Shown: positions 12,074-29,110 of the stretch, in pieces
Numbering within the stretch: the first letter of the stretch is position 1
Layout of the letters: each line of letters starts with the position of its first letter
Virus record (IMG/VR): IMGVR_UViG_3300033145_003233
Location: 124,001 to 188,000 of that record
Length of the DNA: 64,000 nucleotides
Direction: 5' to 3' (one strand)
The notes under the pieces: generated by a model
The model's database searches: none
Told to the model about the DNA's origin: nothing
Seen by the model: the letters and a program-made list of their open reading frames with translations, nothing else
Made by a program: the position numbers and the translations under genes

Positions 12074-12472
12074 TCACTTTTCAAGTGTTTTTATTTTTTC
12101 TTTATTCGGAGTATATATTCCGCCCCCTATTCCAAATCTTTCTTTTAAAACAATTGCCATTTGTTTTGAATCTTCAATAAAACTATCCCAATAATCTTCT
12201 CCAGAAGGAGAAGGAAGCTCTCCTCTTAATCTTCTTATATATCCGAATAATTTACCTATTCTTCCGCTCCCCCATATAAGGCCAGTTATTCTAGTGCTTG
12301 CCAAAAAGTAAATATTATTAAGGTTCCACATCATTTCTATTGAAGTCATTAATCTAAATCTATCTGGGTGTTTAGTTATTCCTATTCTCGTTTCTAATAT
12401 TATCGTAAATAAGATAAGAGGTATTGATATAATTATTAACATAAACATAAGAATGTATTTGAATATTTTCAT
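12074..12472 (-). CDS. hypothetical membrane protein
   Basis: N-terminal hydrophobic helix. Confidence 0.7.
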   Translation of the reverse strand: MKIFKYILMFMLIIISIPLILFTIILETRIGITKHPDRFRLMTSIEMMWNLNNIYFLASTRITGLIWGSGRIGKLFGYIRRLRGELPSPSGEDYWDSFIEDSKQMAIVLKERFGIGGGIYTPNKEKIKTLEK

Positions 12473-12696
12473 AAATCTAAAATGTCAAACCTATTATCTA
12501 TTGGATTATTTATTTTATAATCTAGTATATTACCTTCTTCATCTCTTTCAAATTTATTGAAACAAGATAAACAATATTTAAACTCACATTTTGACTGATC
12601 CTCTGGAGGAAAAAGATCTATTCTTACAGCATATTTATTCCCATCTAAAAGGTTGCCACAATGATCACAATAATATTTTTGTTCTTTTTCAATCAT
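12469..12696 (-). CDS. CxxC protein, tag NRFDILDL
   Basis: CDHC/CLSC; C-terminal tag. Confidence 0.8.
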   Translation of the reverse strand: MIEKEQKYYCDHCGNLLDGNKYAVRIDLFPPEDQSKCEFKYCLSCFNKFERDEEGNILDYKINNPIDNRFDILDL

Positions 12697-13031
12697 AAAT
12701 CTAAAATCTCAAAACGATTATTAATAGGGTCAGGATTAACAATAGTGTTTTTCCCAACCCATATCTGATGTCCAATCGCAGCTTCTTCCCATGTAGAATA
12801 TCTTTCCTGCTCTCCATCGAGGGGGCCTCCAAATACCATAGTTTCAAAAACTATGGGAGGATCACTCTTATAATAATTATGATTCAAACCCAGAAACACA
12901 GTTGAAATCTCAATATCTCCTATCTTAGTTTGCGCAAGTACCCTATCAGCCTTAGCAAACCATTTGCCCCATTCATTAATGTCTTCACACATGACAGGTT
13001 TATGACCTTCTAATATATAATGCTCAGCCAT
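12693..13031 (-). CDS. phage hypothetical protein, tag NRFEILDL
   Basis: ISTVFLGLNH..FETMVFGG; tag. Confidence 0.8.
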   Translation of the reverse strand: MAEHYILEGHKPVMCEDINEWGKWFAKADRVLAQTKIGDIEISTVFLGLNHNYYKSDPPIVFETMVFGGPLDGEQERYSTWEEAAIGHQIWVGKNTIVNPDPINNRFEILDL

Positions 13032-13038
13032 TTCTTAC

Positions 13039-13227
13039 CTATAAATCCAAAATTTCAAATCTACTCTCTATAGGAATAGGAAGTATTCCTTTCATTATTT
13101 CCTCTGTAGGCCAATATTCATCTTTATCATAACAAGTTTGGCAATAAGATGTGGCATGACCCTCAACATAAATAATTGTTTTGTAATACCCACATCGAGG
13201 ACAACGCATTTCATCTATAAAACTCAT
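13039..13227 (-). CDS. CxxC protein, tag SRFEILDL
   Basis: CPRC/CQTC; tag. Confidence 0.8.
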   Translation of the reverse strand: MSFIDEMRCPRCGYYKTIIYVEGHATSYCQTCYDKDEYWPTEEIMKGILPIPIESRFEILDL

Positions 13228-13442
13228 ATATCCAAAATCTCAAATCTATCATTAATTTTAACAATTTTATTTTTGTCTATGTTCTCCGAGACATTCTCTA
13301 AGGGGCAATCCGGAGAAATAAATGAAGAGACATAACTAGAATCAAATCTCTTCTGAGTTTTTTGGCAAACAAAAAAATAAACAACTTTTTCAAGAAAAGG
13401 ACACTCATCACAATATTCGATTAATAAATCTAATTTCTTCAT
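13224..13442 (-). CDS. Cys-rich protein, tag DRFEILDI
   Basis: CDECP..C..CP; tag. Confidence 0.8.
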   Translation of the reverse strand: MKKLDLLIEYCDECPFLEKVVYFFVCQKTQKRFDSSYVSSFISPDCPLENVSENIDKNKIVKINDRFEILDI

Positions 13443-13624
13443 ATATCTAAGATCTCAAATCTGCTATATATTGGCTCTGGAGGAATGTGCCTTCTAGCAC
13501 AAGTTGCACATGCTATAAATACTTTTCCTTCATCATCAGCGGATTCCCATTCCCATACTTCTTTAGCAACAGCAAATCTCTCATAACCTAGCATTATTTT
13601 TCTATTACAAAAAGCGCAATACAC
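13439..13624 (-). CDS. CxxC protein, tag SRFEILDI
   Basis: CAFC/CATC; tag. Confidence 0.8.
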   Translation of the reverse strand: MYCAFCNRKIMLGYERFAVAKEVWEWESADDEGKVFIACATCARRHIPPEPIYSRFEILDI

Positions 13625-13863
13625 TATATATCCAATATTTCAAATCTACTATATATGCCTTCCGGCAATACATATTTACACTCATACCATCCACCATATG
13701 GCATTACATCATTTCTTTCACAACAAATAGAACAATATATTTTCGCTCTTTCATATTTGCCTTTAATCCCGATAGCCCACATCTTTTTATTTAAACGATA
13801 TTCTTTAATAGTTAAATATTTTTCACCTACCCATATCTCCTCACAACAAATATCACAATACAT
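13624..13863 (-). CDS. CxxC protein, tag SRFEILDI
   Basis: CDIC/CSIC; tag. Confidence 0.8.
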   Translation of the reverse strand: MYCDICCEEIWVGEKYLTIKEYRLNKKMWAIGIKGKYERAKIYCSICCERNDVMPYGGWYECKYVLPEGIYSRFEILDI

Positions 13864-14210
13864 TATATGTCCATTATCTCAAATCTATTTTCTATAATAG
13901 TATCTTTTTCTATAACTGTATTGCCTTTTGTAGGAAGAGGAGGTATGGGCATCCAATGAGTTACTGACCAAAATTTCTTTGATAAAGGGTTAAAAAAACC
14001 ATAGAACCTCTTATTTACATCAAACATAAACATTGAGGTGTCTCCTTTGTGAGATAAATGTTCAGGACAAATCCTCAATAGGGCAGAAAAGATTGTGCTG
14101 TCGGGAACTCCATTCTCCATTTTACCACGAACTGGGTCTATATCACAACAGAGAACCGTTTTCCCTATTGGGGGCAATCTCTTTTTAACATTATGCCATT
14201 GTCTTCTCAT
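13863..14210 (-). CDS. DUF551-like protein, tag NRFEIMDI
   Basis: WHNVKKRLP...VTHWMPIPPLP; tag. Confidence 0.75.
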   Translation of the reverse strand: MRRQWHNVKKRLPPIGKTVLCCDIDPVRGKMENGVPDSTIFSALLRICPEHLSHKGDTSMFMFDVNKRFYGFFNPLSKKFWSVTHWMPIPPLPTKGNTVIEKDTIIENRFEIMDI

Positions 14211-14446
14211 TATAAATCCATAATTTCAAATCTACTCTTTATTGGTGATGGTCTAGGAGCTTTTTTTGTCGTATCTATAGAACCATTTACTGCTCTGGCA
14301 TTCATCGAACATCTTCTATGATAACAATATAAACGATGTATCGGTTTCGACATATCAGTTAATCTTGCACTTTCTTCTGATGCCCAGATTTTTTTACCAC
14401 AATAATGACAAATTGTATAAGGAACTTTTATAGATGATGATCCCAA
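14210..14446 (-). CDS. CxxC protein, tag SRFEIMDL
   Basis: CHYC/HRRC; tag. Confidence 0.8.
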   Translation of the reverse strand: MGSSSIKVPYTICHYCGKKIWASEESARLTDMSKPIHRLYCYHRRCSMNARAVNGSIDTTKKAPRPSPIKSRFEIMDL

Positions 14447-14778
14447 TTCTCCCCTGGCCCCTCTCTTCTAAAGCAAGATTTATCTCTTAACATATCTGAA
14501 ATACGAACTGTTGTTCTTTTTGATGTTACCCACTCCTCACCCTCGACTAAATAAAGATCGGTCCATTCAAGTTCTACCTGTGTTCCGTCCTGTTCAGTAT
14601 CTTTTATTATATGTCCGTTAATTGGTATGCTATGTGTCTTTTTAAATTCCTTACACTTTTCATTTAATTCTCTTAATGCCGTGTGGATCTTCTCTCTTGC
14701 TTCATATTGTTTTCTTTTAAGATCCAGTAATTTCTTTTCTAATTGTTCTCTTTGTGTTTTAAGTGTTTTCTTTTTCAT
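14428..14778 (-). CDS. coiled-coil hypothetical protein (untagged)
   Basis: start trimmed to MKKKT after GGAG. Confidence 0.7.
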   Translation of the reverse strand: MKKKTLKTQREQLEKKLLDLKRKQYEAREKIHTALRELNEKCKEFKKTHSIPINGHIIKDTEQDGTQVELEWTDLYLVEGEEWVTSKRTTVRISDMLRDKSCFRREGPGENWDHHL

Positions 14779-14797
14779 TTGTTCTCTCCTATCTTTA

Positions 14798-15067
14798 TTA
14801 TAAATCCATAATCTCAAATCTATTATCTATGGAATCTGATACCTCTTCTATTATTTTTGCAAACTCTTTTATTTCTCTTTCTGACCAATTATAGCCAATC
14901 TCTTCCATCTTATAAATTCTAAACATTTCATGCCCATTTGCGCTCTTTTCTCGAGTAAAATCTTTTATTGTAAATATGTTTTTATGTTTTTTTAATGCTT
15001 CTCGTATGTCTGTATTATAATTATCATGAGCTATTATCTCTACCTTATCTCCTATTTTATATTTCAT
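14798..15067 (-). CDS. MKYKxGD (SH3/KOW-like) protein, tag NRFEIMDL
   Basis: paralog of 22933-24105 genes; tag. Confidence 0.8.
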   Translation of the reverse strand: MKYKIGDKVEIIAHDNYNTDIREALKKHKNIFTIKDFTREKSANGHEMFRIYKMEEIGYNWSEREIKEFAKIIEEVSDSIDNRFEIMDL

Positions 15068-15252
15068 ATATCTAAAATCTCAAATCTACTATATATTGGC
15101 ACAGGTATCGGGAGAGGCTTTGGAACCTGTGGATAACTATATTCGTGCTCACCAGGACATGTCTCACAATAATAGATCACAGCATAATCATCAGGACAAG
15201 TAACAATAGTTTTTAATTTTCCACAACAAGAACAAATTCTTAACACAGCCAT
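15064..15252 (-). CDS. CxxC protein, tag SRFEILDI
   Basis: CSCC/CETC; tag. Confidence 0.8.
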   Translation of the reverse strand: MAVLRICSCCGKLKTIVTCPDDYAVIYYCETCPGEHEYSYPQVPKPLPIPVPIYSRFEILDI

Positions 15253-15254
15253 GA

Positions 15255-15467
15255 TTACAAATCCAGAATATCGAACCTACTAACCACTGATTCTCCTTTT
15301 TCTCCTCCACGTCTTACCCACCAATAACAAGCTGTACAGTAATATTCATAAGAAGATCCCCAAGCAGGATAGACATAATGATATTCTCCAAATGGTTTGC
15401 CCATTAAAGATTTCTCACAACGAAAACATTTTACCGGGTCATCCATACGATAAGTCCAATATCTCAA
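15255..15467 (-). CDS. CxxC protein, tag SRFDILDL
   Basis: CFRC/CTAC; tag. Confidence 0.8.
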   Translation of the reverse strand: MRYWTYRMDDPVKCFRCEKSLMGKPFGEYHYVYPAWGSSYEYYCTACYWWVRRGGEKGESVVSRFDILDL

Positions 15468-15810
15468 ACCGACTTATTATAGGATCAAAAACTTCTTCTT
15501 CTGGTTCTTCTGTTTCTTCTTTATAATTTAATATAAACTGTTTTAATGCACTCTTATTGCAAGAATCATTTGAATCGATATTAAGGTCGAACAAACCCAT
15601 TCTATTTTTCATCAACTTAACTTTTTTATTGCCGCTATTATCAATATACCTATGTGCAATAACGCTCGCCGTGTGTCTCTCTCTCATCCCTAAAACACCG
15701 AATAGAGGACTTTTTAACCTTACTTCCTCCGTAAAAATTTTATTCTTGGCCATATCATCGTCATCAAGAATTATAATTTTTCCATATGTTACATGGTCTA
15801 AAGTTATCAT
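15439..15810 (-). CDS. hypothetical protein, tag SRFEILDLSYG
   Basis: start trimmed to MITLD; KLMKNRMG resembles a DnaB-type C-terminal motif (weak). Confidence 0.7.
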   Translation of the reverse strand: MITLDHVTYGKIIILDDDDMAKNKIFTEEVRLKSPLFGVLGMRERHTASVIAHRYIDNSGNKKVKLMKNRMGLFDLNIDSNDSCNKSALKQFILNYKEETEEPEEEVFDPIISRFEILDLSYG

Positions 15811-16004
15811 ATTCCCTCCCGCTTTATTGCTAACATAATTAATGTTGTTTGAGTACAATTAAACCATCTTTGCACAAAATCTAATGCCAAGTCGTCCTCT
15901 TTATATTTATCTAAAAAATAGAACAATACTTTCTTGTCATAATCTGTAAATTCTTGAGAAGTTCTCTTTTTCTGATCTCCTAATTGTGTTCTCAAGGAAG
16001 TCAT
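15807..16004 (-). CDS. hypothetical protein (untagged)
   Basis: coupled ORF. Confidence 0.65.
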   Translation of the reverse strand: MTSLRTQLGDQKKRTSQEFTDYDKKVLFYFLDKYKEDDLALDFVQRWFNCTQTTLIMLAIKREGI

Positions 16005-16210
16005 AGGTCTAATATCTCGAATCTACTAAATATTGGATCAAAAATTGGTTCCTCATCGAAAATATACACAGAAGGCGAAGAAGATCTTTTTTCGGTACAG
16101 CTATTACAATAAAAATTTTGTGCATTAACCGTATGATTAACAATAGTAAGAGGACCTCCTCCAGGGATAATTATTTTACTACAACTATTACACATATATC
16201 CAGTTGCCAT
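16001..16210 (-). CDS. CxxC protein, tag SRFEILDL
   Basis: start trimmed to MATGY; CNSC x2; tag. Confidence 0.78.
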   Translation of the reverse strand: MATGYMCNSCSKIIIPGGGPLTIVNHTVNAQNFYCNSCTEKRSSSPSVYIFDEEPIFDPIFSRFEILDL

Positions 16211-16211
16211 A

Positions 16212-16388
16212 TTATAAATCCAAAATCTCAAATCTATCATATATAGGAGTTGGAACTAAAACTGCCATACTTCTTTTACATTTTTTCTGAATAACACAGT
16301 CTGTGCAATGAAAATTAGCATCAAAGAAAACAATCTCTTCATTATCTTCTATCTTTTTGCGACAAGCATGACACTTCATTTCTACCAT
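16212..16388 (-). CDS. 58 aa CxxC protein missing from track, tag DRFEILDL
   Basis: translated by hand: MVEMKCHACRKK...CTDC...PIYDRFEILDL*. Confidence 0.8.
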   Translation of the reverse strand: MVEMKCHACRKKIEDNEEIVFFDANFHCTDCVIQKKCKRSMAVLVPTPIYDRFEILDL

Positions 16389-16657
16389 TACAAATCCATC
16401 ATCTCAAATCTATCTATATTTTCTCTTTTCTCTACCTCCTTTTTTAAGGGCCTTCTTACTATATGATCTCCCTTCTGTCTTCCCCAACCAACCACTATCT
16501 CCCATCCATCTGCAAGAAGATAATATATAGATTCCATATTTTGCCCCATATCACCATATCTGCCATAGTCATACTTGTCAAAAAATCCATATTCATAATT
16601 ATCTATTTCCATTCTTTTCGTAATAACATATTTATCTTTATATTTATCTCTAGCCAT
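16388..16657 (-). CDS. LADGWE-family protein, tag DRFEMMDL
   Basis: paralog of 18490 and 18696; tag. Confidence 0.8.
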   Translation of the reverse strand: MARDKYKDKYVITKRMEIDNYEYGFFDKYDYGRYGDMGQNMESIYYLLADGWEIVVGWGRQKGDHIVRRPLKKEVEKRENIDRFEMMDL

Positions 16658-16911
16658 TACAAATCTAATATTTCAAATCTGCTCCCTATCGGAATAAAGA
16701 AAGATTTATTTTCCAAAATCTCAAAATAGCTACTTGATTTAACAGAATCTCCTTCAAAATAAGAGAGAAAACAAATTTCCATTATTTCTGGAATCTCTAG
16801 AATTTCTTCTCCATTAAAAATAAGACGATAACAAGCAGTATGGGTTCCGGAGCAAGCAAATCCAGCACAAGCGAAAGAACGTTGAAAACGATCTTTATTT
16901 CTAACTCTCAT
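16657..16911 (-). CDS. hypothetical protein, tag SRFEILDL
   Basis: tag. Confidence 0.75.
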   Translation of the reverse strand: MRVRNKDRFQRSFACAGFACSGTHTACYRLIFNGEEILEIPEIMEICFLSYFEGDSVKSSSYFEILENKSFFIPIGSRFEILDL

Positions 16912-17348
16912 AAATCCATCATCCCAAAGCGACCGTCCTCAGCATTTATTGGTTTGGGGGTTTTTCTTTCAGGAGGACGAGGATCTAATTCATATCCAGC
17001 ACGTTCTGACTCTCCTATTCTTTTTATTTTTTTCCATTGTCTTCTAGATATTTGAGAAATACTTTTTTTCATACAAGATTGACAAGCACACGTCCATCCC
17101 CAAAAAGAAACTTGTAGAACTACACTGCTTGTAGTCTTGTTCCCAAATTTATCCTTCGTTTTAATTGGGGCCAAGCAAAAACTATGTTTTTCTCTGACAT
17201 CCATACCATGCTCTACATCATAACCAATACTCTGCCATGAATATTTTCCCTCTTCTTTGGTGCTTGTTGTAATCGTTTCTTTTTTCCCGCAAAAATCACA
17301 AATATATGTGCTTGTATGTTTATGACTTTCTTCTTTTTTTACTCCCAT
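16908..17348 (-). CDS. CxxC protein, tag GRFGMMDL
   Basis: CDFC/CQSC; divergent tag. Confidence 0.78.
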   Translation of the reverse strand: MGVKKEESHKHTSTYICDFCGKKETITTSTKEEGKYSWQSIGYDVEHGMDVREKHSFCLAPIKTKDKFGNKTTSSVVLQVSFWGWTCACQSCMKKSISQISRRQWKKIKRIGESERAGYELDPRPPERKTPKPINAEDGRFGMMDL

Positions 17349-17350
17349 AA

Positions 17351-17545
17351 TTATTTCTTCTTCAATTTTTTCAGAGCTTTTTTCGAAGCCACATCAATTC
17401 TTTTAATAATAAAAAATGGTCCCATCTCAGGATATTCAGAAACTATTTCTTCTTCAAAAGGACATTCAGAACAACATACAACTCTGTCTGATGCCAAATT
17501 CTTCTTACATAGTTTGACATGCTTTTTTAGCTTTTTCTTATCCAC
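17351..17545 (-). CDS. basic Cys-containing hypothetical protein
   Basis: coupled ORF. Confidence 0.65.
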   Translation of the reverse strand: MDKKKLKKHVKLCKKNLASDRVVCCSECPFEEEIVSEYPEMGPFFIIKRIDVASKKALKKLKKK

Positions 17546-17754
17546 TATCTCTTTTCCAATTTTGGAGTTTTAAATGATTCTTCATGACACTGTGTTAAAA
17601 TAGTTTTTAAAAGCCTACCAGAACCTTTGCACTTTTTACACGTTTCAGTCCAATGATCATAATGACCATTATGATAATCTGTTAATTCACTTTGATGAAT
17701 TACCCCTTCTCCTTCACATTTGGTGCATAAAATTATTTGCTTTTCTTTATCCAT
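17545..17754 (-). CDS. DnaJ-type zinc-finger-like protein
   Basis: CTKCEGEG and CKKCKGSG (CxxCxGxG x2). Confidence 0.7.
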   Translation of the reverse strand: MDKEKQIILCTKCEGEGVIHQSELTDYHNGHYDHWTETCKKCKGSGRLLKTILTQCHEESFKTPKLEKR

Positions 17755-17959
17755 ATTTATGATCCTCCTTTACTTCTTGAATGCTCCCCACATGATCTCC
17801 ATGGAAATGGACAACACTAAATATGTTCATTAAAGGGTATTTCATAATCAACCCATTCTTGAGTTGAAAACAACAAAACCCACCCTTTGTGTAGATTGCC
17901 TCAACATCTTTTCTCACTAATGGCGTAGACGCTGAGTGAAAAATTATTTCAACTTCCAT
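17747..17959 (-). CDS. hypothetical protein
   Basis: coupled ORF with GGGGG RBS. Confidence 0.7.
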   Translation of the reverse strand: MEVEIIFHSASTPLVRKDVEAIYTKGGFCCFQLKNGLIMKYPLMNIFSVVHFHGDHVGSIQEVKEDHKYG

Positions 17960-17981
17960 TATTTACCCCCCACAATAATTT

Positions 17982-18245
17982 CTACAAATCTATGTCTCTA
18001 TCCCATTGCTGTCCAGGATGAACCCTTGTATATCTCCTGCTAGCACAGCCAGGAGTACTTAAAACATTCTTCCAAGACCAAAGTGCAAAGATCCCCAACA
18101 ACACAGCAGATAGGAGATTCCAAAAAGAAACATAAAACCACAAACAATATAAAGCCCTCAAAAAGAAAGCGCTAAATATTAAGGCCACGACACCTCTCAA
18201 GCTTTTAAACTTAGAGGCATTTCTTTTAATTAGAAACCAACTCAT
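17982..18245 (-). CDS. hypothetical membrane protein
   Basis: two hydrophobic helices. Confidence 0.7.
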   Translation of the reverse strand: MSWFLIKRNASKFKSLRGVVALIFSAFFLRALYCLWFYVSFWNLLSAVLLGIFALWSWKNVLSTPGCASRRYTRVHPGQQWDRDIDL

Positions 18246-18259
18246 CTTTTTAACTCCTT

Positions 18260-22511: not shown

Positions 22512-22933
22512 TATTTATCTCCTAAATCTAATATCTCAGACCTATTCTCTATCTCAGACTCTCCTATATCTACGGTAGTAGGGGGAACAGGAGCAACAGG
22601 TGCTTCTATAACTACTTCTGCTCCCGCATTAGGAGTAAACTTTACCCAAGGTTCTGCTCTGTCAATCTCCCAATATATCGTCCAATCAAAATATAAATTA
22701 CTAATAATGGGGAATAAAGAGTTCCTAAGCAATGCAGGAATCTTTTTCCCCTTCTCTAAAAATTTCTTAGGTAGAAAATCTTTCTCAGATATAGCTATAT
22801 TTCCATCATTAATAAGTTCCTGATAATGAGAACTTATATAAGAGTCGATGCCTTGCTCGGCCGCTATAGCACACTCTTGTACTAAAGCTTCAAAATTATT
22901 ATCTATTAAAACTTGACCTGGAGAAATAGCCAT
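22511..22933 (-). CDS. ITPxD-family paralog, tag NRSEILDL
   Basis: LYFDW; tag. Confidence 0.78.
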   Translation of the reverse strand: MAISPGQVLIDNNFEALVQECAIAAEQGIDSYISSHYQELINDGNIAISEKDFLPKKFLEKGKKIPALLRNSLFPIISNLYFDWTIYWEIDRAEPWVKFTPNAGAEVVIEAPVAPVPPTTVDIGESEIENRSEILDLGDK

Positions 22934-23235
22934 TATTCATTTCCTAAATCTAAAATTTCAAATCTGTTATCTATTGAATTAAATATTGCTTCTTCTACTA
23001 ATTCTTCTATCATCTCATCACTCCAAATCCAACCAATCTCTACCATAGAATAACGAACACCCTCATTGCAAATACCTTTTATTGTAAGAATTCTATTAGA
23101 AATTGATTTTAATGCTTCTTCCATATCAGTTACAAAACGCCCTGGAATTGCAATAGCAAGGCCTGTACTGTCAAACTCCTTTGCCATGTCTACCCATGTC
23201 TTTATCTTTACTCTATCTCCTACTTTATATTTCAT
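22933..23235 (-). CDS. MKYKVGD (SH3/KOW-like) paralog, tag NRFEILDL
   Basis: KVGDRVKIKTW..RILTI..WSDEMIE. Confidence 0.8.
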   Translation of the reverse strand: MKYKVGDRVKIKTWVDMAKEFDSTGLAIAIPGRFVTDMEEALKSISNRILTIKGICNEGVRYSMVEIGWIWSDEMIEELVEEAIFNSIDNRFEILDLGNE

Positions 23236-23519
23236 ATATCTAAGATCTCAAATCTGTTATCTATTTCTTCTGCTAATCCCTCTCCTTCAAATCCTTCTAT
23301 CATCTCATCACCCCATTCATTGTCAGTTCCTTCCATGCGATAAGAATGATCCCCAATATATTGTATTGTAAGAATTCTATCAGGGAGGGATTCTAATAAT
23401 ATTTCCATACAAGTTGTAAAGGATAATGGCACTGCAATAGAAGAACCTTTAAGACCAAATTCTTTCTTCATGTCTACCCATGTTTTTATTTTTACTCTAT
23501 CTCCTATTTTATATCTCAT
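23232..23519 (-). CDS. MKYKVGD paralog, tag NRFEILDI
   Basis: same motifs. Confidence 0.8.
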   Translation of the reverse strand: MRYKIGDRVKIKTWVDMKKEFGLKGSSIAVPLSFTTCMEILLESLPDRILTIQYIGDHSYRMEGTDNEWGDEMIEGFEGEGLAEEIDNRFEILDI

Positions 23520-23815
23520 ATGTCTAAGATCTCAAATCTGTTACCTATTGGTTCGGGCATCTTTATTTCTTTTGCTAATCCCTCTATCATATCGTCAGTC
23601 CATCTCCAATCAATATCTTCCATATAATAATATCCTTTTTCAATGCTTTTTATTATAAGAATCCTGTCAGAATTTAAGTCGCTTTCCATTCTGCTTGTAA
23701 AATTGCCTGATGTTGCAAGAACCCAATCATCTGGCCTGTCCCACCTGTGCCCGAACTCTGCCAGCATCGCTTCCCATGCTTTTATCTTTACCTCGTCTCC
23801 TACTTTGTATTTCAT
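23516..23815 (-). CDS. MKYKVGD paralog, tag NRFEILDI
   Basis: same motifs. Confidence 0.8.
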   Translation of the reverse strand: MKYKVGDEVKIKAWEAMLAEFGHRWDRPDDWVLATSGNFTSRMESDLNSDRILIIKSIEKGYYYMEDIDWRWTDDMIEGLAKEIKMPEPIGNRFEILDI

Positions 23816-24105
23816 ATGTCTAAGATCTCAAATCTGTTATCTATTGGTTCTATTGTCTTTATGTCTTTTGCTAATCCCTCTATCATATCATCAGTCCAAG
23901 ACCAACGAACATTTTCCATCTCATAAAAATCTTCTTTAACTTTTCGTATTATAAGAATCCTGTCAGAATTTAATGATTTTTCCATGTCAGTTATAAAAGT
24001 TTTTGATACTTTAAGAACCCGATCTTCTCCTGGCTGACACCCAAACTCTGCTTTCATCTCTTTCCATGTTTTTATCTTTACCTCGTCTTCTACTTTGTAT
24101 TTCAT
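23812..24105 (-). CDS. MKYKVGD paralog, tag NRFEILDI
   Basis: same motifs. Confidence 0.8.
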   Translation of the reverse strand: MKYKVEDEVKIKTWKEMKAEFGCQPGEDRVLKVSKTFITDMEKSLNSDRILIIRKVKEDFYEMENVRWSWTDDMIEGLAKDIKTIEPIDNRFEILDI

Positions 24106-24326
24106 ATGTCTAAGATCTCAAATCTACTTTCAATTATATCTTCAGAATTTAATCTCTTTGGATTATCATAATCTAAATGACCATACTCCCTATAAAACGA
24201 GGCAGCAGTACATTGCCATTTATTATAATAGTTACATTCAGGCAATCCATCATGGCCAGGTAATTTACAAAGTGTTTTTTTCTCAAATTCACACTCTCTA
24301 CTCATTTTGCCATAAGATTCCTTCAT
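24102..24326 (-). CDS. Cys-rich protein, tag SRFEILDI
   Basis: tag. Confidence 0.78.
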   Translation of the reverse strand: MKESYGKMSRECEFEKKTLCKLPGHDGLPECNYYNKWQCTAASFYREYGHLDYDNPKRLNSEDIIESRFEILDI

Positions 24327-24730
24327 TGCTCATCACCTAAATCCAATATCTCTGCTCTATTCGTGATAACCTCATCAGGAGTTATTTCTTTCTGAACTCC
24401 CTCACCCACACTAGTACCTAATTCTTCTCTATAATTTATCTTAACTTTAGGAGATAATGCCAAATATTGAGAACCAACCGCGAATTTTAAATTCCAGCTT
24501 TTATATATTTTTCGCAATGGAACCATAAGATCATTTTCTGCAAAACCATGACTAGATTCAGTAAGTAGTTTCCATGGAATCCATACATAATTTAATTTAC
24601 ATATCTGCTCTTGTTCATCTACTATGTACCCGTTGATTATTGTTATACATGCACCAACAGCAGCTTCTAACCTTTTTTTCTGCTTACCGATATAAGCTAT
24701 CTTAATATCTTCTGGAGTTATCTCTTCCAC
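24323..24730 (-). CDS. ITPxD-family paralog, tag NRAEILDL
   Basis: MEEITPEDI; tag. Confidence 0.8.
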   Translation of the reverse strand: MEEITPEDIKIAYIGKQKKRLEAAVGACITIINGYIVDEQEQICKLNYVWIPWKLLTESSHGFAENDLMVPLRKIYKSWNLKFAVGSQYLALSPKVKINYREELGTSVGEGVQKEITPDEVITNRAEILDLGDEQ

Positions 24731-24731
24731 A

Positions 24732-25127
24732 CTAATCCTCTAAATCCAATATCTCTGCCCTATGCTCTATCACTTCATTAGGAGCAACAGACTTATTTTT
24801 CTTCTTAATCTGACCAATATTTAAACTAAGCTCATCACTTATTTTTTTGCGGGAAGAAAAACGAATGTGTAATCCATCTTTTCTAATCTCCCAAGCAGTA
24901 TATATCTCTTTTAAGTATTTAAGTATGTCATCATATTCCCTGTTGTTTTCATAATTGATATGGTCACTAGTGATAAAATAGATATATCCATCTCTACATA
25001 TTTGTTCACATCTTTCTAATAATGCATCGTTAAGAGATTCTATAGCTGATTCTATCTTTATTTTTAGTTGCTCTCCATATGTCTCTATATATTTTTTTCT
25101 TACATCATCTGGTGTTATGCCATCCAT
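24732..25127 (-). CDS. ITPxD-family paralog, tag HRAEILDL
   Basis: MDGITPDDV; tag. Confidence 0.8.
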   Translation of the reverse strand: MDGITPDDVRKKYIETYGEQLKIKIESAIESLNDALLERCEQICRDGYIYFITSDHINYENNREYDDILKYLKEIYTAWEIRKDGLHIRFSSRKKISDELSLNIGQIKKKNKSVAPNEVIEHRAEILDLED

Positions 25128-25128
25128 G

Positions 25129-25590
25129 CTATTCCCCTAAATCCAATAACTCAGATCTATTCTCTACTGGACTATCCCTAACAACAATCTCAACCTCACT
25201 ACAATTAGGTTCTTTTTCTTCTTCCGATTTTTCTTCTAAAGTATTATCAAAAGGAGTCTTTGGCCTAAATCTAAAATAATAGTTAGATCCATAATTAGAT
25301 TCAACTATCCAACTAGTAAAAGTATCTTGTACGGCTTTTTTTATGAATTTCCAATTATAACCTAAATTTATCTCTTCTTTTATAAAGGACCGTTTAGGAA
25401 AAATAGATGATTGGTATATATCAATATAACCATCTAATATTAATTGACTCTTATCTTTTGATAATGTTTTATTAATTATCTGTATAGCATGGTTAATAAG
25501 ATTCTCTATTTTTGTCTTATTTACTTTTATATATTGATTTCTAATCATATCAGGTGTTATTTCTTCTTTATTATCACTCCAAACTTTCAT
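25129..25590 (-). CDS. ITPxD-family paralog, tag NRSELLDL
   Basis: start trimmed to MKVWS; EEITPDMI; tag. Confidence 0.78.
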   Translation of the reverse strand: MKVWSDNKEEITPDMIRNQYIKVNKTKIENLINHAIQIINKTLSKDKSQLILDGYIDIYQSSIFPKRSFIKEEINLGYNWKFIKKAVQDTFTSWIVESNYGSNYYFRFRPKTPFDNTLEEKSEEEKEPNCSEVEIVVRDSPVENRSELLDLGE

Positions 25591-25591
25591 A

Positions 25592-25777
25592 TCAACTTTC
25601 CAAAACCTTCTTAATCTTCTCTGCCATGTCCATACCAAGCTCTCTAGTCGCATAGTCTATTATTGCAATATTACATATTGCATTCTTAGAGGAATCTTTA
25701 CATACAACCCATATAGGACGGTCTTTTAACATTCCCGAACCTTTCCATGGCTCTATTTCAACTTTTTCTGTTTTCAT
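25592..25777 (-). CDS. hypothetical protein (untagged)
   Basis: coupled ORF. Confidence 0.65.
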   Translation of the reverse strand: MKTEKVEIEPWKGSGMLKDRPIWVVCKDSSKNAICNIAIIDYATRELGMDMAEKIKKVLES

Positions 25778-26145
25778 TCTCTTAAATCCAATATTTCTGA
25801 CCTATTTTGAACTTTCTCAATTTCTTCTTCTATATCTGAAGAACTGACAGGTTTATCGTCTCTCATAACTTCATTTAAATGAATTTTTAACCCTTCTTTT
25901 AATGTAAAGAGGAGTTTTCCATCATCTTTTGTAACTTCCCAATCTTCATATATTGCATTTAAAGCCTTTATAAGAATTTCAAGATCATTATCATATTTAT
26001 AAGAAATATGACAGCGACCTGTTTGACCTACCTTTTTATAATTAGCCAATAATGTTTTATTAATAACTGTCATGGCCTTTTGTACTTCTTGACCTATAAA
26101 TTCTGTAAATTTTTCTTTAATATCATCTGATGTTACGGGTTTCAT
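25774..26145 (-). CDS. ITPxD-family paralog, tag NRSEILDL
   Basis: PVTSDDI; tag. Confidence 0.8.
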   Translation of the reverse strand: MKPVTSDDIKEKFTEFIGQEVQKAMTVINKTLLANYKKVGQTGRCHISYKYDNDLEILIKALNAIYEDWEVTKDDGKLLFTLKEGLKIHLNEVMRDDKPVSSSDIEEEIEKVQNRSEILDLRE

Positions 26146-26146
26146 A

Positions 26147-26524
26147 CTAAGTCCCTAAATCCAAAATTTCTGCTCTATTATCTATAATATCGTCAGTACT
26201 TACCGGCTTATTTTCTCCTTTAATCTTAACTGAATCTAATTTAATCTCATCTATAGAATCCTTAGCAGAAAAAGTCATAGAAAGACCATTCTTAGTGATA
26301 TTCCAATCAGCATATATCTTTTGTAAATATTCAATAATAGTGTAAATTTCTGTGCTATTAGCATATTCCATTCCACTAATAGGAATATTAACATAACCTT
26401 TCTGACAGATTAATCTATAATTAGCTAATAATGCCTTATTGAAATAAGCTACTGCTATACCAACCTTCTTCTCTAAATCAGCTTTATATGTATCTTTGAT
26501 AGTTTTAATAGTCATACCTTCCAT
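26147..26524 (-). CDS. ITPxD-family paralog, tag NRAEILDL
   Basis: IYADW; tag. Confidence 0.8.
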   Translation of the reverse strand: MEGMTIKTIKDTYKADLEKKVGIAVAYFNKALLANYRLICQKGYVNIPISGMEYANSTEIYTIIEYLQKIYADWNITKNGLSMTFSAKDSIDEIKLDSVKIKGENKPVSTDDIIDNRAEILDLGT

Positions 26525-26979
26525 TATATATCCAATATCTCTGACCTATTATCTATTGAACTATCAACAACAACTTCTTCTTTTTTCTTTTTTTCCGATT
26601 TTTTATCTAATTTCATAGTGAAATCAGAGCCAGGATGAAATCTAAAGTAATATTCTCCACCAGCTCTATTAGATTCTATATTCCAACTTGTAAAAATATC
26701 CTGTACAGCTTTATTTATAAATTGCCAAGTATTTTTTAAATCTAATCTTTTTCCATCAAAGGATTTATTTGGGAAAATATGTTTTTGGCCTACATCAATA
26801 CTGCCACTCTCTATTAATTCTTTAGTTCCTGCTGATAGCTTTCCATTAATTATTTGTACAGTGTGACGAATAAGATTTTGTATCTTTATATCGTTTTTAT
26901 TTATATACTTATTTCTAAGCATATCGGGAGTTATCTCTTCTTCACTATCACTCCATGTTTCTTGAGGTTCACATCTCAT
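26524..26979 (-). CDS. ITPxD-family paralog, tag NRSEILDI
   Basis: EEITPDML; tag. Confidence 0.8.
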   Translation of the reverse strand: MRCEPQETWSDSEEEITPDMLRNKYINKNDIKIQNLIRHTVQIINGKLSAGTKELIESGSIDVGQKHIFPNKSFDGKRLDLKNTWQFINKAVQDIFTSWNIESNRAGGEYYFRFHPGSDFTMKLDKKSEKKKKEEVVVDSSIDNRSEILDI

Positions 26980-26980
26980 C

Positions 26981-27432
26981 TTATTTCTCTAAATCTAACA
27001 ACTCTGACCTACTATCTATCGAAATATCAATAACATCAACTTTTTTTCTTTTGATTTTTTATCCAATGTTGTATCAAGAGGGGTTCTTGCTCTAAAGTTT
27101 AAAGATCTAGTCCGATCAACAATAGATTCAACATTCCAATTTGTAAAAGTGTTCTGTACGGCTCTAACTATAAATACCCAAGTACTGATTAAATCTATTT
27201 CATCTTTTTTAAACATAGGTTCAGGAAAAATAAATTCTTGATTTATTTTAATGCTGTTATTTTTCATTAGGTCTACAGACCCCTGTGATAAACCTTTATT
27301 AACCATTTGTATAGTATGACTAATAAGCTTTTTTATTTTTTCTGAGTTACGCTTTAAATACTCATCTCTGAGCATCTCAGGTATTATCTCTTCTTTATTT
27401 TTACTCCATGTGTTTTGAGGTTCACATCTCAT
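26981..27432 (-). pseudogene. ITPxD-family paralog frameshifted in an A7 run before tag SRSELLDLEK
   Basis: one extra A at 27041-27047 restores VDVIDISIDSRSELLDLEK*. Confidence 0.75.
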
Positions 27433-27433
27433 C

Positions 27434-27895
27434 TTATTTCTCTAAATCTAACAACTCTGACCTGTTCTCTATTGCCTCTCCAGGGACTATTGCCTCTTCT
27501 TTCGCTTCTAATTCTATTTTTATGTTTTTATCAATAAGTTCTTTGGGAGAAAATTTAAAATGAGGGTTTGCTTTATTCTTAACCAGCTTTACGTCCCATT
27601 CTGTGAAAACTCCATAAATAGTTACATAAATAAAATCTATTCTTTCAGATTTTTTCGAAAAATTCCAATTCTTTCCATTTATAGTGATTCTATCAATAAA
27701 AACCTCGTCCCATAAAGAAGCAAAAGTATCTTTATATACTATGATAATAGTGCCATCTTTAACAATAGAATCACTATGATATTTTAAATCTTCATTAACG
27801 ATTTTTATAGTTGAAGAAATAACCTTCTCTATTACAGAAATATGTTTATCCTTATATCCATTCAGGATGTTCTCTGGAGTTATAGGCTCTTCCAT
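27434..27895 (-). CDS. ITPxD-family paralog, tag NRSELLDL
   Basis: EPITPENI; tag. Confidence 0.8.
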   Translation of the reverse strand: MEEPITPENILNGYKDKHISVIEKVISSTIKIVNEDLKYHSDSIVKDGTIIIVYKDTFASLWDEVFIDRITINGKNWNFSKKSERIDFIYVTIYGVFTEWDVKLVKNKANPHFKFSPKELIDKNIKIELEAKEEAIVPGEAIENRSELLDLEK

Positions 27896-28071
27896 TAGTT
27901 ACTCTTCCGCAAATGGAAGGTTCATCCATTCTTCAAAACATTTTGCTTTGCAAAAATCTTTCTTATGGAATCTATCAGGCAATGTTATTCCACTCCTATT
28001 ACCAAGATATCCTTCTAATTTTATTCTTTCTTCCCCACAAATTTCTCCACAAAAATCACATTTTATAATAA

Positions 28072-28275
28072 TCATTTTTCTCCTCCTAAATCTAAAATAT
28101 CTATTCTACTCTCTATCCCTTCATCGAGAATTTCTTCTATTTTCTCTAATTGAGAAAACTGAACGACTTGGAACTTTTTTTGACAATGATCACAAATCTG
28201 TTCACCTGAGATGTCTTTTACCATTTTAAGTTTCTTATCACAATGAGGGCATATCTTACTATATAAATATTCCAT
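28072..28275 (-). CDS. CxxC protein, tag SRIDILDL
   Basis: CPHC/CDHC; tag. Confidence 0.78.
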   Translation of the reverse strand: MEYLYSKICPHCDKKLKMVKDISGEQICDHCQKKFQVVQFSQLEKIEEILDEGIESRIDILDLGGEK

Positions 28276-28697
28276 TACTTTTCTCCCAAATCTAAAATCT
28301 CTGCTCTGTTATTTATAATATCGTTAAGAGTTACTTCTTTCTTCTGTTTCTTGTTAAAATCTACTCGTATTTCTATATCAATAGGAGTTTTAGGTCTAAA
28401 ACAAAAATAGTGACCTCCAGAATAGAAATAAGAACTTACTTTCCAATTCTTATAAAATTTACGTACGTTGTCCGCCAAAACCGTCCATCTACTTTCAATA
28501 GCTTTTGCACAGAATCCATCATTATCAAGATCTCCTCTGGCCTTCACATAAACAAAGCCATCATCTACTATCGCTTGATATCTCTCTTTTAATAATTTGT
28601 TTATAATATCTATAGAATAGGAAACGAGATTTTCCATTATCGGGGTTTCTTTGTCTATATATAATTCTTTAATATTTTCTGGTGTTACTTCTTCCAT
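28275..28697 (-). CDS. ITPxD-family paralog, tag NRAEILDL
   Basis: EEVTPENI; tag. Confidence 0.8.
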   Translation of the reverse strand: MEEVTPENIKELYIDKETPIMENLVSYSIDIINKLLKERYQAIVDDGFVYVKARGDLDNDGFCAKAIESRWTVLADNVRKFYKNWKVSSYFYSGGHYFCFRPKTPIDIEIRVDFNKKQKKEVTLNDIINNRAEILDLGEK

Positions 28698-29110
28698 TAT
28701 ATATCCAATATATCAAATCTGCTCTCTACTGGTTCAGTAGTAATTAAAGGAATATCTTTTTTCTGTTCGGCAGTAGGGGCCATCTCTATTACAATAGGTT
28801 CTTTCGGCATAAATTGAAAATACCGTCCCTTATTTTCACAACCTGAAGCTATATCCCAACTTTTAAAAAATTTGCCTAAACAATCTCCCAAGAGTTCCCA
28901 ACTGGTATCTGTTGCTCTGAAGCCTTTAGGAAGATTTAAATCTGAACGAAGTATGTTAAGATATCCAGATGAGATAATAACTTTATACTTATCTACTAAT
29001 ATCTGATTAATAGTTTCTATACATGGAGACACTAATCCATCTAATAATGGAATCTCTTTTTCCATAAATATATTTTTGATATCTTCGGGAGTTACTTCTT
29101 TCATATCCAT
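28697..29110 (-). CDS. ITPxD-family paralog, tag SRFDILDI
   Basis: KEVTPEDI; tag. Confidence 0.8.
   Translation of the reverse strand: MDMKEVTPEDIKNIFMEKEIPLLDGLVSPCIETINQILVDKYKVIISSGYLNILRSDLNLPKGFRATDTSWELLGDCLGKFFKSWDIASGCENKGRYFQFMPKEPIVIEMAPTAEQKKDIPLITTEPVESRFDILDI

What the first reader, a model, noticed from the sequence alone, without database searches (positions are those of the whole stretch)
12469..29110. A shared C-terminal peptide tag (RFEILDL) on 43 otherwise diverse small proteins
Seen: 43 of about 56 consecutive coupled ORFs end in or near (P)-I-x-[NSDH]-R-[FSA]-[ED]-[ILM]-[LM]-D-[LI], usually right before the stop. The bodies belong to many unrelated families: CxxC zinc ribbons, DUF551-like, MKYKVGD SH3/KOW-like, LADGWE and ITPxD. 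The DNA encoding the tag varies synonymously (Arg as AGG, CGT, AGA, CGG, CGC; Leu as TTA, TTG, CTG, CTA; Asp as GAT, GAC), so it is conserved as peptide and is not a DNA repeat. No ORF after 31 kb carries it. Known: short C-terminal peptides dock many clients on one hub, for example T4 gp45 clamp-binding LDF motifs, the SSB C-terminal tail and ClpX C-terminal degrons. Inference: this is a phage library of swappable domains addressed by one peptide to one partner, such as a clamp, AAA+ unfoldase/protease, RNA polymerase, or a virion or phage-nucleus sorting factor. I do not recognise the motif as described.
Basis: partly seen in the sequence, partly recalled or inferred. Interest (0 to 1): 0.93.

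Follow-up and report, generated by a model that had tools for sequence, protein, structure and literature searches.

The report
Shared C-terminal address peptide, huge phage
In an uncultured 548 kb phage, dozens of otherwise unrelated small proteins all end in the same 11-residue peptide (P-I-x-N-R-F-E-I-L-D-L) on a floppy linker; it most likely plugs them all into one still-unknown partner, a much larger version of the "one address label, many cargoes" logic known from phage T4.

Summary
There are 43 tag sites, all on the minus strand, all in 12,472-28,720, and all within 17 aa of a stop; shuffles predict 0.08. Selection acts on the peptide: third codon positions vary freely, Arg is encoded by CGN in 16 of 95 tags from other phages, and core pN/pS is about 0.19. 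The tag DNA also resembles three tandem heptamers and usually fills the ribosome-binding region of the next gene, but neither property is the conserved feature.

The window lies on a 548 kb IMG/VR phage contig that carries at least 63 tagged genes. The same tag ends small proteins in arrays in other huge phage contigs (351, 298 and 219 kb) and in about 25 metagenome contigs, many from Loki's Castle sediment. I found 137 tagged proteins in 78 BLAST-distinct families.

AlphaFold2 gives a folded body followed by a disordered linker and tag. In gp32-like SSB relatives the tag replaces the acidic docking tail. My best reading is a tethered docking motif shared by a fast-diversifying set of small phage proteins. 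The partner was not identified. Candidates are a clamp or replisome hub, T4-CTS-like virion loading, and a protease or unfoldase. I found no description of the motif in the literature.

The parts
12469..29110 (-). Island of 58 tightly packed minus-strand genes, of which 42 intact and 1 frameshifted carry the C-terminal tag.
   Evidence: Core tag codons (R..L/I) lie at 12472-12492, 12696-12716, 13042-13062, 13227-13247, 13442-13462, 13627-13647, 13866-13886, 14213-14233, 14801-14821, 15067-15087, 15258-15278, 15451-15471, 16004-16024, 16215-16235, 16391-16411, 16660-16680, 16911-16931, 18699-18719, 19489-19509, 19734-19754, 20042-20062, 20308-20328, 20729-20749, 21126-21146, 21735-21755, 22119-22139, 22523-22543, 22945-22965, 23235-23255, 23519-23539, 23815-23835, 24105-24125, 24338-24358, 24741-24761, 25138-25158, 25783-25803, 26156-26176, 26527-26547, 26990-27010, 27443-27463, 28087-28107, 28287-28307, 28700-28720.
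20257..29110 (-). Fifteen paralogs of a ~125-175 aa family ('ITPxD' N-terminus). Their tags are of the R[SA]E[IL]LDL type, usually followed by 2-16 extra residues (G-D/E-x) that encode the next gene's GGAG Shine-Dalgarno. Other tagged genes are interspersed among them.
   Evidence: bodies are 16-31% identical to the first member while the tag is nearly invariant. AF2 gives body residues 1-101 pLDDT above 90 and linker plus tag pLDDT about 50; no fold match.
22933..24105 (-). Four tandem 'MKYKVGD...WxWTDDMIEGL' SH3-like paralogs with the tag. A fifth member lies at 14798-15067.
   Evidence: family. (structural neighbours are phage SH3_15-type modules); this is the most widespread tagged family, with 27 tagged members in 16 loci.
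12469..16388 (-). Run of small (58-146 aa) tagged proteins that are mostly CxxC zinc-ribbon-like singletons, plus a marginal DUF551-like protein (13863-14210). Nearly all end exactly at the tag, and the next ATG overlaps the stop.
16388..18947 (-). The LADGWE family, with tagged members at 16388-16657 and 18696-18947 and an untagged, shorter member at 18490-18696 (natural tag loss). This stretch also holds a block of untagged small genes (17351-18433).
26984..27432 (-). A 44th member broken by a +/-1 frameshift in an A7 run. Its tag (SIDSRSELLDLEK) is intact in the other frame.
29134..29161 (-). Best sigma70-like promoter match (TTGAAA-16-TATAAT, 11 of 12), directly upstream of the first tagged gene. 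A second 11 of 12 site at 12057-12084 lies just past the last tagged gene.
   Evidence: This is a consensus match only; the total number of sites is not enriched over shuffles.
145..426 (-). Zinc-ribbon ORF ending in a degenerate tag (IHNRWEILIL). Its homolog in L053 ends in a full tag (VHNRFEILDL).

Best explanation
The tag is a short linear docking motif. It consists of about 11 residues, P-[IV]-x-[NSD]-R-[F/W/L/S/A]-[ED]-[IL]-[LM]-D-[LI], at or within 16 residues of the C-terminus, held on a disordered, charge- and Pro-rich linker. The [NSD]-x-x-E capping-box pattern and the spacing of hydrophobic residues suggest that it folds on binding into a two-turn amphipathic helix (inference). A large, rapidly duplicating and diversifying set of small phage proteins (zinc ribbons, SH3-like, OB/SSB-like and novel folds) carries it, with at least 63 genes in this genome. 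Through it they would all be recruited to one conserved partner. What is shown: peptide-level purifying selection, exclusive C-terminal placement, the disordered tether, modular association with unrelated bodies, clade-wide conservation, and replacement of an SSB's acidic docking tail by the tag. What is inferred: that the tag binds a single partner, and which partner. My ranking of partners is: (i) a DNA-replication-associated hub such as a sliding clamp, about 0.25; (ii) a head or scaffold component, which would make the tag a C-terminal analogue of the T4 capsid-targeting sequence that loads diverse anti-defence proteins for co-injection, about 0.2; (iii) an AAA+ unfoldase or protease, with the tag acting as adaptor docking peptide or timed degron, about 0.15; the remainder is other or unknown.
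For: Peptide-level selection. Third codon positions carry little information. Synonymous codon use at N, R, F, I and D matches genome usage (p > 0.19). In 95 tags from other phages, Arg is CGT or CGA in 16 and Asp is GAT 54 / GAC 41. The seven core codons give pS = 0.69 against pN = 0.13. All tags are in frame 0, although frames +1 and +2 of the same DNA contain stops. Fourteen window tags have S or A in place of F, which breaks the first heptamer yet keeps R, E, I, L, D and L.

Modularity. There are 137 tagged proteins (46-240 aa) in 78 BLAST families. Within families the bodies are 27-37% identical while the tag core is 62-100% identical.

Placement. All 146 core matches in 592 proteins of tag-bearing loci lie within 20 aa of the C-terminus.

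Tether. AF2 gives a confident body and a disordered last ~35 residues. Linkers are enriched in E (1.8x), P (1.4x) and K (1.3x).

Tail swap. The tagged L049 and L123 proteins are homologous to gp32-like SSBs (BLASTP 9e-10; phrog_1607), and the tag sits where those SSBs carry their acidic ...DDWESNF tip.

Replication context. L276 has 11 tags interspersed with DnaB, DnaG and DnaE. In L003 and L034 the arrays abut DnaE and SSB.

Motif class. Phi-acidic-Phi-Phi at a flexible terminus resembles the T4 gp45-binding LDFLF helix (PMC6212786).

Precedent. T-even internal proteins are diverse and share only a capsid-targeting sequence (PMC3012670).
Against: No partner was found. The window and the fetched loci show no clamp, protease or scaffold candidate. 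The only recurrent untagged neighbour family also occurs on contigs without tags. The DnaE polymerases of tag-bearing phages end in ETIDIFG, ETVDLFA or ESFDIFA and not in the tag, and DnaB and SSB use a different acidic tail, so the core replisome does not use this label. An early-type sigma70-like promoter and the replication-module context argue against late, head-assembly loading (weak evidence). There is a residual nucleotide-level signal: GAG over GAA at the tag Glu in this phage (25:10) and in others (56:19), no CTN Leu codons, and lag-7 periodicity. The tag DNA also lies in the initiation region of the next gene at 27 of 42 junctions, so part of the conservation could serve translation. 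AF2 shows only disorder, not binding.
Confidence: 0.6

Rival explanations
1. Virion-loading signal. The tag is a C-terminal counterpart of the T4 capsid-targeting sequence or of encapsulin cargo-loading peptides. It would bind the scaffold or the inner capsid surface, so that a large and variable set of small (anti-defence or take-over) proteins is packaged and co-injected with the DNA.
For: The logic is identical to that of T-even internal proteins, which are diverse and share only the CTS (PMC3012670). The families look like arms-race genes: tandem duplication, fast divergence, tag loss and degeneration. The terminal peptide follows a flexible linker, as in encapsulin cargo (own knowledge). 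The partner would be phage-encoded and conserved, which fits clade-wide conservation of the tag.
Against: The island appears to start at a sigma70-like promoter, and in other phages the arrays sit within replication modules, which suggests early or middle expression. No protease-type cleavage motif is evident. No structural genes are adjacent. No virion proteomics exist.
Confidence: 0.2
2. Degron or adaptor-docking peptide for an AAA+ unfoldase or protease (ClpX, ClpA, Lon or FtsH type, or a phage enzyme). The tag would either give early proteins a limited lifetime or let each body deliver a bound host target for destruction.
For: Placement is strictly C-terminal (146 of 146) and at the end of an unstructured tail, as for ssrA-type degrons and the SspB ClpX-binding tail (own knowledge). 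The context is early-type.
Against: About a third of window tags are followed by 1-16 further residues, so a free carboxylate directly at the motif is not required. The motif is acidic and unlike known degrons. No protease gene was found nearby; an HExxH ORF at 30631-31092 is only a sub-threshold SprT-like hit (E = 0.027).
Confidence: 0.15
3. The tag acts in cis during translation. Either the nascent peptide or the RNA that encodes it (three AGATNTN heptamers directly upstream of the next ATG) promotes termination-reinitiation coupling along the long polycistronic array.
For: Of 42 tagged genes, 27 overlap the next start by 4 or 1 nt and only 9 junctions have an SD-like sequence. In the rest of the window the figures are 4 of 85 and 41 of 85. 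GAG and ATA codon preferences keep an AGA or GGA every 7 nt. Lag-7 self-similarity is 7.95 of 14 against 3.96 +/- 1.73.
Against: The tag keeps its full consensus when the next start is 16 to more than 100 nt away or has its own GGAG. CGN Arg codons and the S/A-for-F variants destroy the heptamers but keep the peptide. Synonymous sites are saturated. Untagged genes within the island are coupled as well. The SSB tail swap and the disordered linker are not explained by a cis role.
Confidence: 0.07
4. It is a DNA repeat (a recombination or cassette-boundary site, or a simple heptamer repeat) that merely happens to be translated.
For: The consensus AGATTTG-AGATWTT-RGATWTA is a 3 x 7 nt tandem repeat. 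The same pattern occurs as untranslated simple repeats in many bacterial genomes.
Against: All 43 window copies and about 100 others are in the one frame that reads R-F-E-I-L-D-L. There are no plus-strand, intergenic or out-of-frame copies. Variation has a 3-nt and not a 7-nt period. Amino-acid replacements are conservative (I/L/M, E/D, L/I). pN/pS is 0.19.
Confidence: 0.02

Closest known systems
T4 / T-even capsid-targeting sequence (CTS) of the internal proteins (IPI, IPII, IPIII and their polymorphic relatives)
   Same: A short conserved terminal peptide is the only thing shared by a diverse, fast-evolving set of small phage proteins encoded in a variable locus, and it addresses them all to one destination (PMC3012670).
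   Different: The CTS is N-terminal, is removed by the prohead protease, has an unrelated sequence, and labels only a handful of proteins per phage. The tag here is C-terminal, shows no evident cleavage site, labels at least 63 genes per genome, and its destination is unknown.
Sliding-clamp-binding motifs (T4 gp45-binding LDFLF at the gp43 C-terminus EKASLDFLFG; bacterial beta-clamp QL[SD]LF type)
   Same: Both are short motifs with a Phi-acidic-Phi-Phi pattern on flexible termini. The T4 motif forms an amphipathic helix that inserts into a hydrophobic pocket (PMC6212786). One hub serves many clients. In some phages the tagged genes lie in replication modules.
   Different: The sequence is not a match (R-F-E-I-L-D-L). 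The polymerases of tag-bearing phages carry a separate clamp-like tail (x-Phi-D-Phi-F-G/A). The client number and client types (tiny zinc ribbons, SH3-like domains) are unlike any known clamp interactome.
SSB C-terminal tip and T7 gp2.5/gp4 acidic tails
   Same: Both are terminal peptides at the end of a disordered linker that dock onto partner proteins. In an SSB-like homolog the tag sits exactly in place of such a tail.
   Different: Those are one protein with many partners, whereas here many proteins carry one peptide. The sequences are unrelated. These phages keep a separate acidic ...DW[EN]NF tail on their SSB and DnaB.
Encapsulin cargo-loading peptides and ssrA / SspB-type C-terminal recognition peptides
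   Same: Both are C-terminal, linker-tethered peptides of about 10 residues that are sufficient to address unrelated cargo to a shell or to an AAA+ machine (own knowledge).
   Different: There is no sequence similarity. No encapsulin-like or protease gene was found nearby. A free C-terminus directly at the motif is not required.

Membership tests
T4-type capsid-targeting sequence | A short conserved peptide shared by otherwise unrelated small phage proteins in a variable locus | tested here: met
   78 BLAST-distinct tagged families; the tag is the only shared element.
T4-type capsid-targeting sequence | N-terminal position with removal by the prohead protease at an (L/I)-x-E site | tested here: not met
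   146 of 146 tags are C-terminal. There is no such site at the tag boundary. Cleavage itself is not testable here.
T4-type capsid-targeting sequence | Cargo found inside the capsid | not testable with these tools
   The phage is uncultured, there are no proteomics, and no sequencing run was listed.
Sliding-clamp-binding motif | Match to the LDFLF (T4) or QL[SD]LF (beta-clamp) consensus | tested here: not met
   The tag is R-F-E-I-L-D-L; only the Phi-acidic-Phi-Phi pattern is shared.
Sliding-clamp-binding motif | Carried by the replicative polymerase of the same phage | tested here: not met
   DnaE-type proteins in L003, L034 and L139 end in ETIDIFG, ETVDLFA and ESFDIFA.
Sliding-clamp-binding motif | Binds the clamp's hydrophobic pocket | not testable with these tools
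   No multimer prediction is available and no clamp gene was recovered.
C-terminal degron (ssrA-like) | Non-polar extreme C-terminus with a free carboxylate that is recognised | tested here: inconclusive
   28 of 43 window tags end at, or one residue before, the C-terminus with L or I. The other 15 are followed by 2-16 further residues.
DNA repeat / cassette boundary site | Nucleotide conservation independent of reading frame and strand | tested here: not met
   Only frame 0 and only the coding strand are used, variation has a 3-nt periodicity, and pN/pS = 0.19.
Translation-initiation or coupling element of the downstream gene | Conservation depends on proximity to the next start codon | tested here: not met
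   The tag is fully conserved at 14 junctions with gaps of 0 to more than 100 nt or with their own SD. It is, however, adjacent to the next ATG at 27 of 42 junctions.
Short linear docking motif (SLiM) on a disordered tail | A conserved island of 6-12 residues within a poorly conserved, disordered region, portable between unrelated domains | tested here: met
   AF2 pLDDT is about 50 for linker and tag against above 90 for the body. Linker composition. Portability.

The most novel reading that the evidence does not exclude
A genome-wide protein 'address code' in huge phages. A single C-terminal peptide wires more than 60 rapidly evolving small binder domains per genome to one effector hub. One version is a PROTAC-like adaptor library that brings many different host (defence) targets to a single phage or host machine. 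Another is a mass-loading signal that packs a variable arsenal of anti-defence proteins into the capsid for co-injection. Either would be a new organisational principle for phage-host warfare and a ready-made modular targeting system.
Probability: 0.3. Interest if true: 0.92.

Novelty: new variant of a known kind. Interest (0 to 1): 0.8.

Why it matters
Most genes of huge phages are small ORFs with no known function. Here a single recognisable label groups more than 60 such genes per genome, and at least 78 unrelated families across a clade, into one functional class. It also predicts that they converge on one partner. Finding that partner would assign a pathway to a large share of this dark matter at once. 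The motif is short, portable and conserved, so it can be tested directly (peptide pull-down, tag-GFP fusions, multimer prediction). If it proves to be a loading or recruitment signal, it could be reused as a modular tag. It would also extend the T4 'one address, many cargoes' principle to a different terminus, a different phage lineage and a much larger scale.

Tried and rejected
1. DNA-repeat reading: rejected by the frame, strand, codon and pN/pS analyses. Hits in bacterial genomes were untranslated heptamer repeats, not tags.
2. Partner in the neighbourhood.
 - The 12 GT-A-like paralogs (936-10708) have no family hits.
 - The ~230 aa conserved neighbour family gave a poor AF2 model (pLDDT 47), no Atlas lead and 65 unnamed relatives. 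It also occurs on contigs without tags, so I dropped it.
 - The embedded ThiS-like gene does not recur near other arrays.
 - The HExxH ORF is only a sub-threshold SprT-like hit.
3. Body function: Pfam and PHROGs are almost empty for the tagged bodies, and the 140 aa family has no fold match in PDB or BFVD.
4. Census of the tag universe. A tag-only HMM against 1.84 billion proteins returned only 10 significant hits because an 11-residue motif sits at the significance limit. A mixed-body profile against 5.8 billion proteins was diluted.
5. Cultured relatives: no megablast, tblastn or short-DNA evidence of tag arrays in 50,697 deposited phage genomes. The nearest SSB relative is Bacillus phage G at 32% identity.
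6. Expression data: no sequencing run was listed.
7. Literature: literal motif strings and 'huge phage C-terminal motif' searches found nothing relevant.
8. 'N-terminal version' of the tag: a Zn-ribbon family with [NSD]RF[DE]LL[IL]FE[DT]A near its N-terminus recurs in three genomes but scores below the tag threshold. I treat it as a resemblance only.

Full report
OBSERVATION. All genes in the window are on the minus strand. A six-frame scan for [RH][FSAIG][EDG][ILM][LMI]D[LI] finds 43 sites, all on the minus strand, between 12,472 and 28,720, and 0-16 residues before a stop codon. A loose DNA back-translation gives 42 matches against 0.08 expected from 100 dinucleotide-preserving shuffles. A position-specific score built from the tags separates cleanly. 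Forty-three sites score at least 17 bits. One degenerate site (IHNRWEILIL, the end of ORF 145-426) scores 9.9. Nothing else in 67,164 positions scores above 8.3. Of 58 predicted genes in 12,469-29,110, 42 intact genes carry the tag. The 43rd tag belongs to a paralog (27,016-27,432) interrupted by a +/-1 shift in an A7 run, with its tag intact in the other frame.

PEPTIDE OR NUCLEIC ACID? Information content drops at every third codon position. Synonymous codon use at N, R, F, I and D does not differ from genome-wide usage (p > 0.19). In 95 further tags from other phages, Arg is CGT or CGA in 16 cases and Asp is GAT 54 / GAC 41. Over all tag pairs, the seven core codons have pS = 0.69 (saturated) and pN = 0.13. 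Replacements are conservative (I/L/M, E/D, L/I). There are no out-of-frame, intergenic or plus-strand copies, even though the same DNA read in the other two frames would simply end the ORF earlier.

The consensus AGATTTG-AGATWTT-RGATWTA is three tandem heptamers, with lag-7 identity of 7.95 of 14 against 3.96 +/- 1.73 for coding windows. The tag Glu prefers GAG (25:10 here and 56:19 elsewhere, against a genomic GAA preference). Leu is almost never CTN. The tag DNA sits directly upstream of the next start codon: 27 of 42 junctions overlap by 4 or 1 nt and only 9 have an SD-like sequence, against 4 of 85 and 41 of 85 for the other genes of the window. However, the S/A-for-F tags and the CGN Arg codons break the heptamers while keeping the peptide. 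The tag is also equally conserved where the next gene is distant or has its own GGAG; the 2-16 residue extensions after many tags in fact encode that GGAG. So the peptide is the constrained object, and translation-related bias is secondary. Hits in bacterial genomes (Microcoleus, Bacteroidota and others) are untranslated heptamer repeats and are irrelevant.

WHERE IT OCCURS. The window is positions ~124,001-188,000 of a 547,943 bp contig (IMG/VR 3300033145_003233, which is JGI Ga0366840_1000004). The contig has 27 tRNA genes in the window and a GC content of about 0.32. The 10 kb on either side of the window have no tags. Eight other, non-overlapping loci of the same genome have 19 more, giving at least 63 in total. 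The same tag ends small proteins, almost always with 0 residues before the stop, in arrays in the following:
- IMG/VR contigs of 351, 298, 219, 65, 33, 31 and 24 kb.
- About 25 metagenome contigs. L118 has 17 tags in 12 kb. Many are from the SDBS/SDBT/SDBU assemblies, which are Loki's Castle deep-sea sediment (PMC6401483).
- Logan and ENA contigs.

In the loci fetched up to I counted 137 tagged proteins of 46-240 aa (median 105) in 78 BLAST-distinct body families. An HMM of the tag against 1.84 billion representative proteins returns only small proteins with the tag at the C-terminus. Three of them carry two tags and look like fused neighbouring ORFs. Two repeat proteins are false positives. 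No deposited phage genome shows a tag array. The nearest cultured relative of the clade's SSB is Bacillus phage G, at 32% identity.

ANATOMY. With the tag removed, the window's tagged proteins form at least 20 unrelated classes:
- A 15-member ~140 aa family.
- Five SH3-like 'MKYKVGD' proteins. ESM Atlas structural neighbours are phage SH3_15-type modules, which elsewhere are fused to enzymes.
- The LADGWE trio, one of which has lost the tag.
- About ten CxxC zinc-ribbon proteins.
- A marginal DUF551 protein and several singletons.

Within families the bodies are 27-37% identical and the tag core is 62-100% identical. AlphaFold2 of the 140 aa family gives a confident alpha/beta body (residues 1-101, pLDDT above 90) with no PDB or BFVD neighbour, followed by about 35 disordered residues that end in the tag. 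The 20 residues before the tag are enriched in E, P, K and D. All 146 core-motif matches in 592 proteins of tag-bearing loci are within 20 residues of the C-terminus. The conserved [NSD]-x-x-E capping box, the preceding Pro, and the hydrophobic positions I(-3), I4, L5 and L7 fit a short amphipathic helix (inference from the sequence pattern).

FUNCTIONAL CLUES.
1. Tail swap. The tagged L049 and L123 proteins (~180 aa) are homologs of gp32-like SSBs found in two other tag-bearing huge phages (BLASTP 9e-10; phrog_1607 at 2e-12 and 6e-14). The SSBs end in a long acidic linker and ...DDWESNF, the classical docking tip. The tagged relatives end in a short linker and PIENRFDILDL.
2. Replication context. 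In L276, eleven tagged genes are interspersed with DnaB, a DnaG zinc ribbon and a split DnaE. In L003 and L034 the arrays abut DnaE and SSB.
3. A separate tail on the core replisome. DnaB (…DEDWNNF) and SSB use a different acidic tail, and DnaE ends in x-Phi-D-Phi-F-G/A. That resembles the T4 gp43 clamp-binding end EKASLDFLFG (PMC6212786). So the tag is a separate label and not the polymerase's clamp motif, although its F-E-I-L core has the same Phi-acidic-Phi-Phi pattern.
4. Promoter-like sites. The best sigma70-like matches on the coding strand bracket the island (29,161-29,134 and 12,084-12,057). This is weak evidence for one early-type transcription unit.
5. No partner nearby. The window and fetched loci contain no clamp, protease, scaffold, PDZ or TPR candidate. 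The one recurrent untagged neighbour family (~230 aa) is unannotated, modelled poorly, and also occurs without tags. The ThiS-family gene embedded in the island (Pfam 1e-12) does not recur near other arrays.

INTERPRETATION. The evidence supports a portable, tethered short linear motif under strong purifying selection, attached to a large and quickly diversifying set of small phage proteins. The most economical mechanism is docking of all of them to one conserved partner; I give this 0.6. The identity of the partner is inferred only. My ranking is:
- A replication-associated hub such as a sliding clamp, about 0.25.
- A head or scaffold component, which would make the tag a C-terminal analogue of the T4 capsid-targeting sequence, about 0.2. 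[quoted passage not shown]
- An AAA+ unfoldase or protease, with the tag as degron or adaptor tail, about 0.15.
- A cis role in translational coupling, about 0.07.
- A pure DNA element, effectively excluded.

NOVELTY AND VERDICT. I found no description of the motif in the literature. The principle of one address peptide on many cargoes is known (T4 CTS, encapsulin cargo peptides, clamp and SSB interaction motifs). The sequence, the terminus, the lineage (uncultured huge phages, many from marine sediment) and the scale (at least 63 genes per genome and at least 78 families) are new. I classify it as a new variant of a known kind, with high interest, because it turns a large block of phage dark matter into one testable hypothesis.

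Noticed in passing
window 936-10708 (-): Twelve tandem paralogs of ~254-293 aa, each overlapping the next by 8 nt and 43-54% identical to one another. They share a conserved 'YYVFLDDDVEL' DxD-like motif that suggests GT-A-type glycosyltransferases. There are no Pfam or PHROG hits. They lie directly downstream of the tagged island.
   Followed up: partly
window 21514-21732 (-): A ThiS-family ubiquitin-like beta-grasp protein (Pfam 1e-12), ending ...FMGGGNACIF, is embedded in the tagged island and overlaps the start of the next tagged gene. It was not found near tag arrays in other phages.
   Followed up: yes
window 46126-47430 (-) and 42248-42760 (-): A PARP-like protein with WGR, PARP regulatory and PARP catalytic domains (1.8e-27), which is an unusual eukaryote-like architecture for a phage. 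A phrog_335 'phosphatase' (possibly macro-like) lies 3.4 kb away, so this could be an ADP-ribosylation writer/eraser pair.
   Followed up: no
window 47686-59550 (-): 27 tRNA genes are interspersed with HNH-type endonuclease-like ORFs (50956-51462, 54154-54630, 58087-58707 on the plus strand, 59048-59380), with a LAGLIDADG endonuclease (44655-46058) just downstream of the tRNA region. Two more members of the same HNH family flank the tagged island (11110-11529 and 29179-30417).
   Followed up: partly
window, all 43 tag sites; genome-contig loci L156-L275: The tag DNA is a 3 x 7 nt tandem repeat (AGATTTG AGATWTT RGATWTA), so one heptamer is read in all three frames in turn. Untranslated (AGATTTN)n repeats are common in cyanobacterial (Microcoleus and others) and Bacteroidota genomes. 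This may be a clue to the tag's origin, or it may be coincidence.
   Followed up: partly
window tag Glu codon (position 6-8 of each core); also loci L003-L139: The tag Glu consistently prefers GAG over GAA (25:10 here and 56:19 in other phages) although these genomes otherwise prefer GAA. CTN Leu codons are almost absent from the tag. Neither is explained; the causes could be initiation-region constraints of the next gene or common descent.
   Followed up: partly
window 26984-27432 (-): A paralog is interrupted by a +/-1 frameshift in an A7 run while its tag stays intact. The cause could be a homopolymer sequencing error, a very recent pseudogene or a slippery-site frameshift.
   Followed up: partly
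L305 (same genome), L005:7847-8668, L022:5694-6342: A conserved Zn-ribbon family carries a tag-like motif near its N-terminus ([NSD]RF[DE]LL[IL]FE[DT]AEE) in all three huge genomes.
   Followed up: partly
L276:687-2285, L003:6529-7230, L034:8942-9637: A second, distinct C-terminal tail class (acidic run followed by DW[EN][SN]NF) is found on the DnaB helicase and the gp32-like SSBs of tag-bearing phages. DnaE-type polymerases end in x-Phi-D-Phi-F-G/A. These phages therefore appear to use several terminal docking peptides in parallel.
   Followed up: partly
P0008, P0010, P0011: These database proteins carry two tags, one internal and one terminal, and look like two adjacent tagged ORFs fused. 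In P0008 a 'Q' follows the first tag, which would fit a TAG stop translated as Gln by a gene caller using an alternative code.
   Followed up: no
L327:7569-8324: A related sediment phage contig encodes an Anti-Pycsar Apyc1-like metallo-beta-lactamase-fold protein (precomputed Pfam) among small genes. This suggests that these small-gene regions hold counter-defence genes.
   Followed up: no
window 30631-31092 (-): A 153 aa ORF with an HExxH motif (LLHEIMHH) and a sub-threshold SprT-like match (E = 0.027) lies just upstream of the island and is conserved in L035 at 61% identity.
   Followed up: partly
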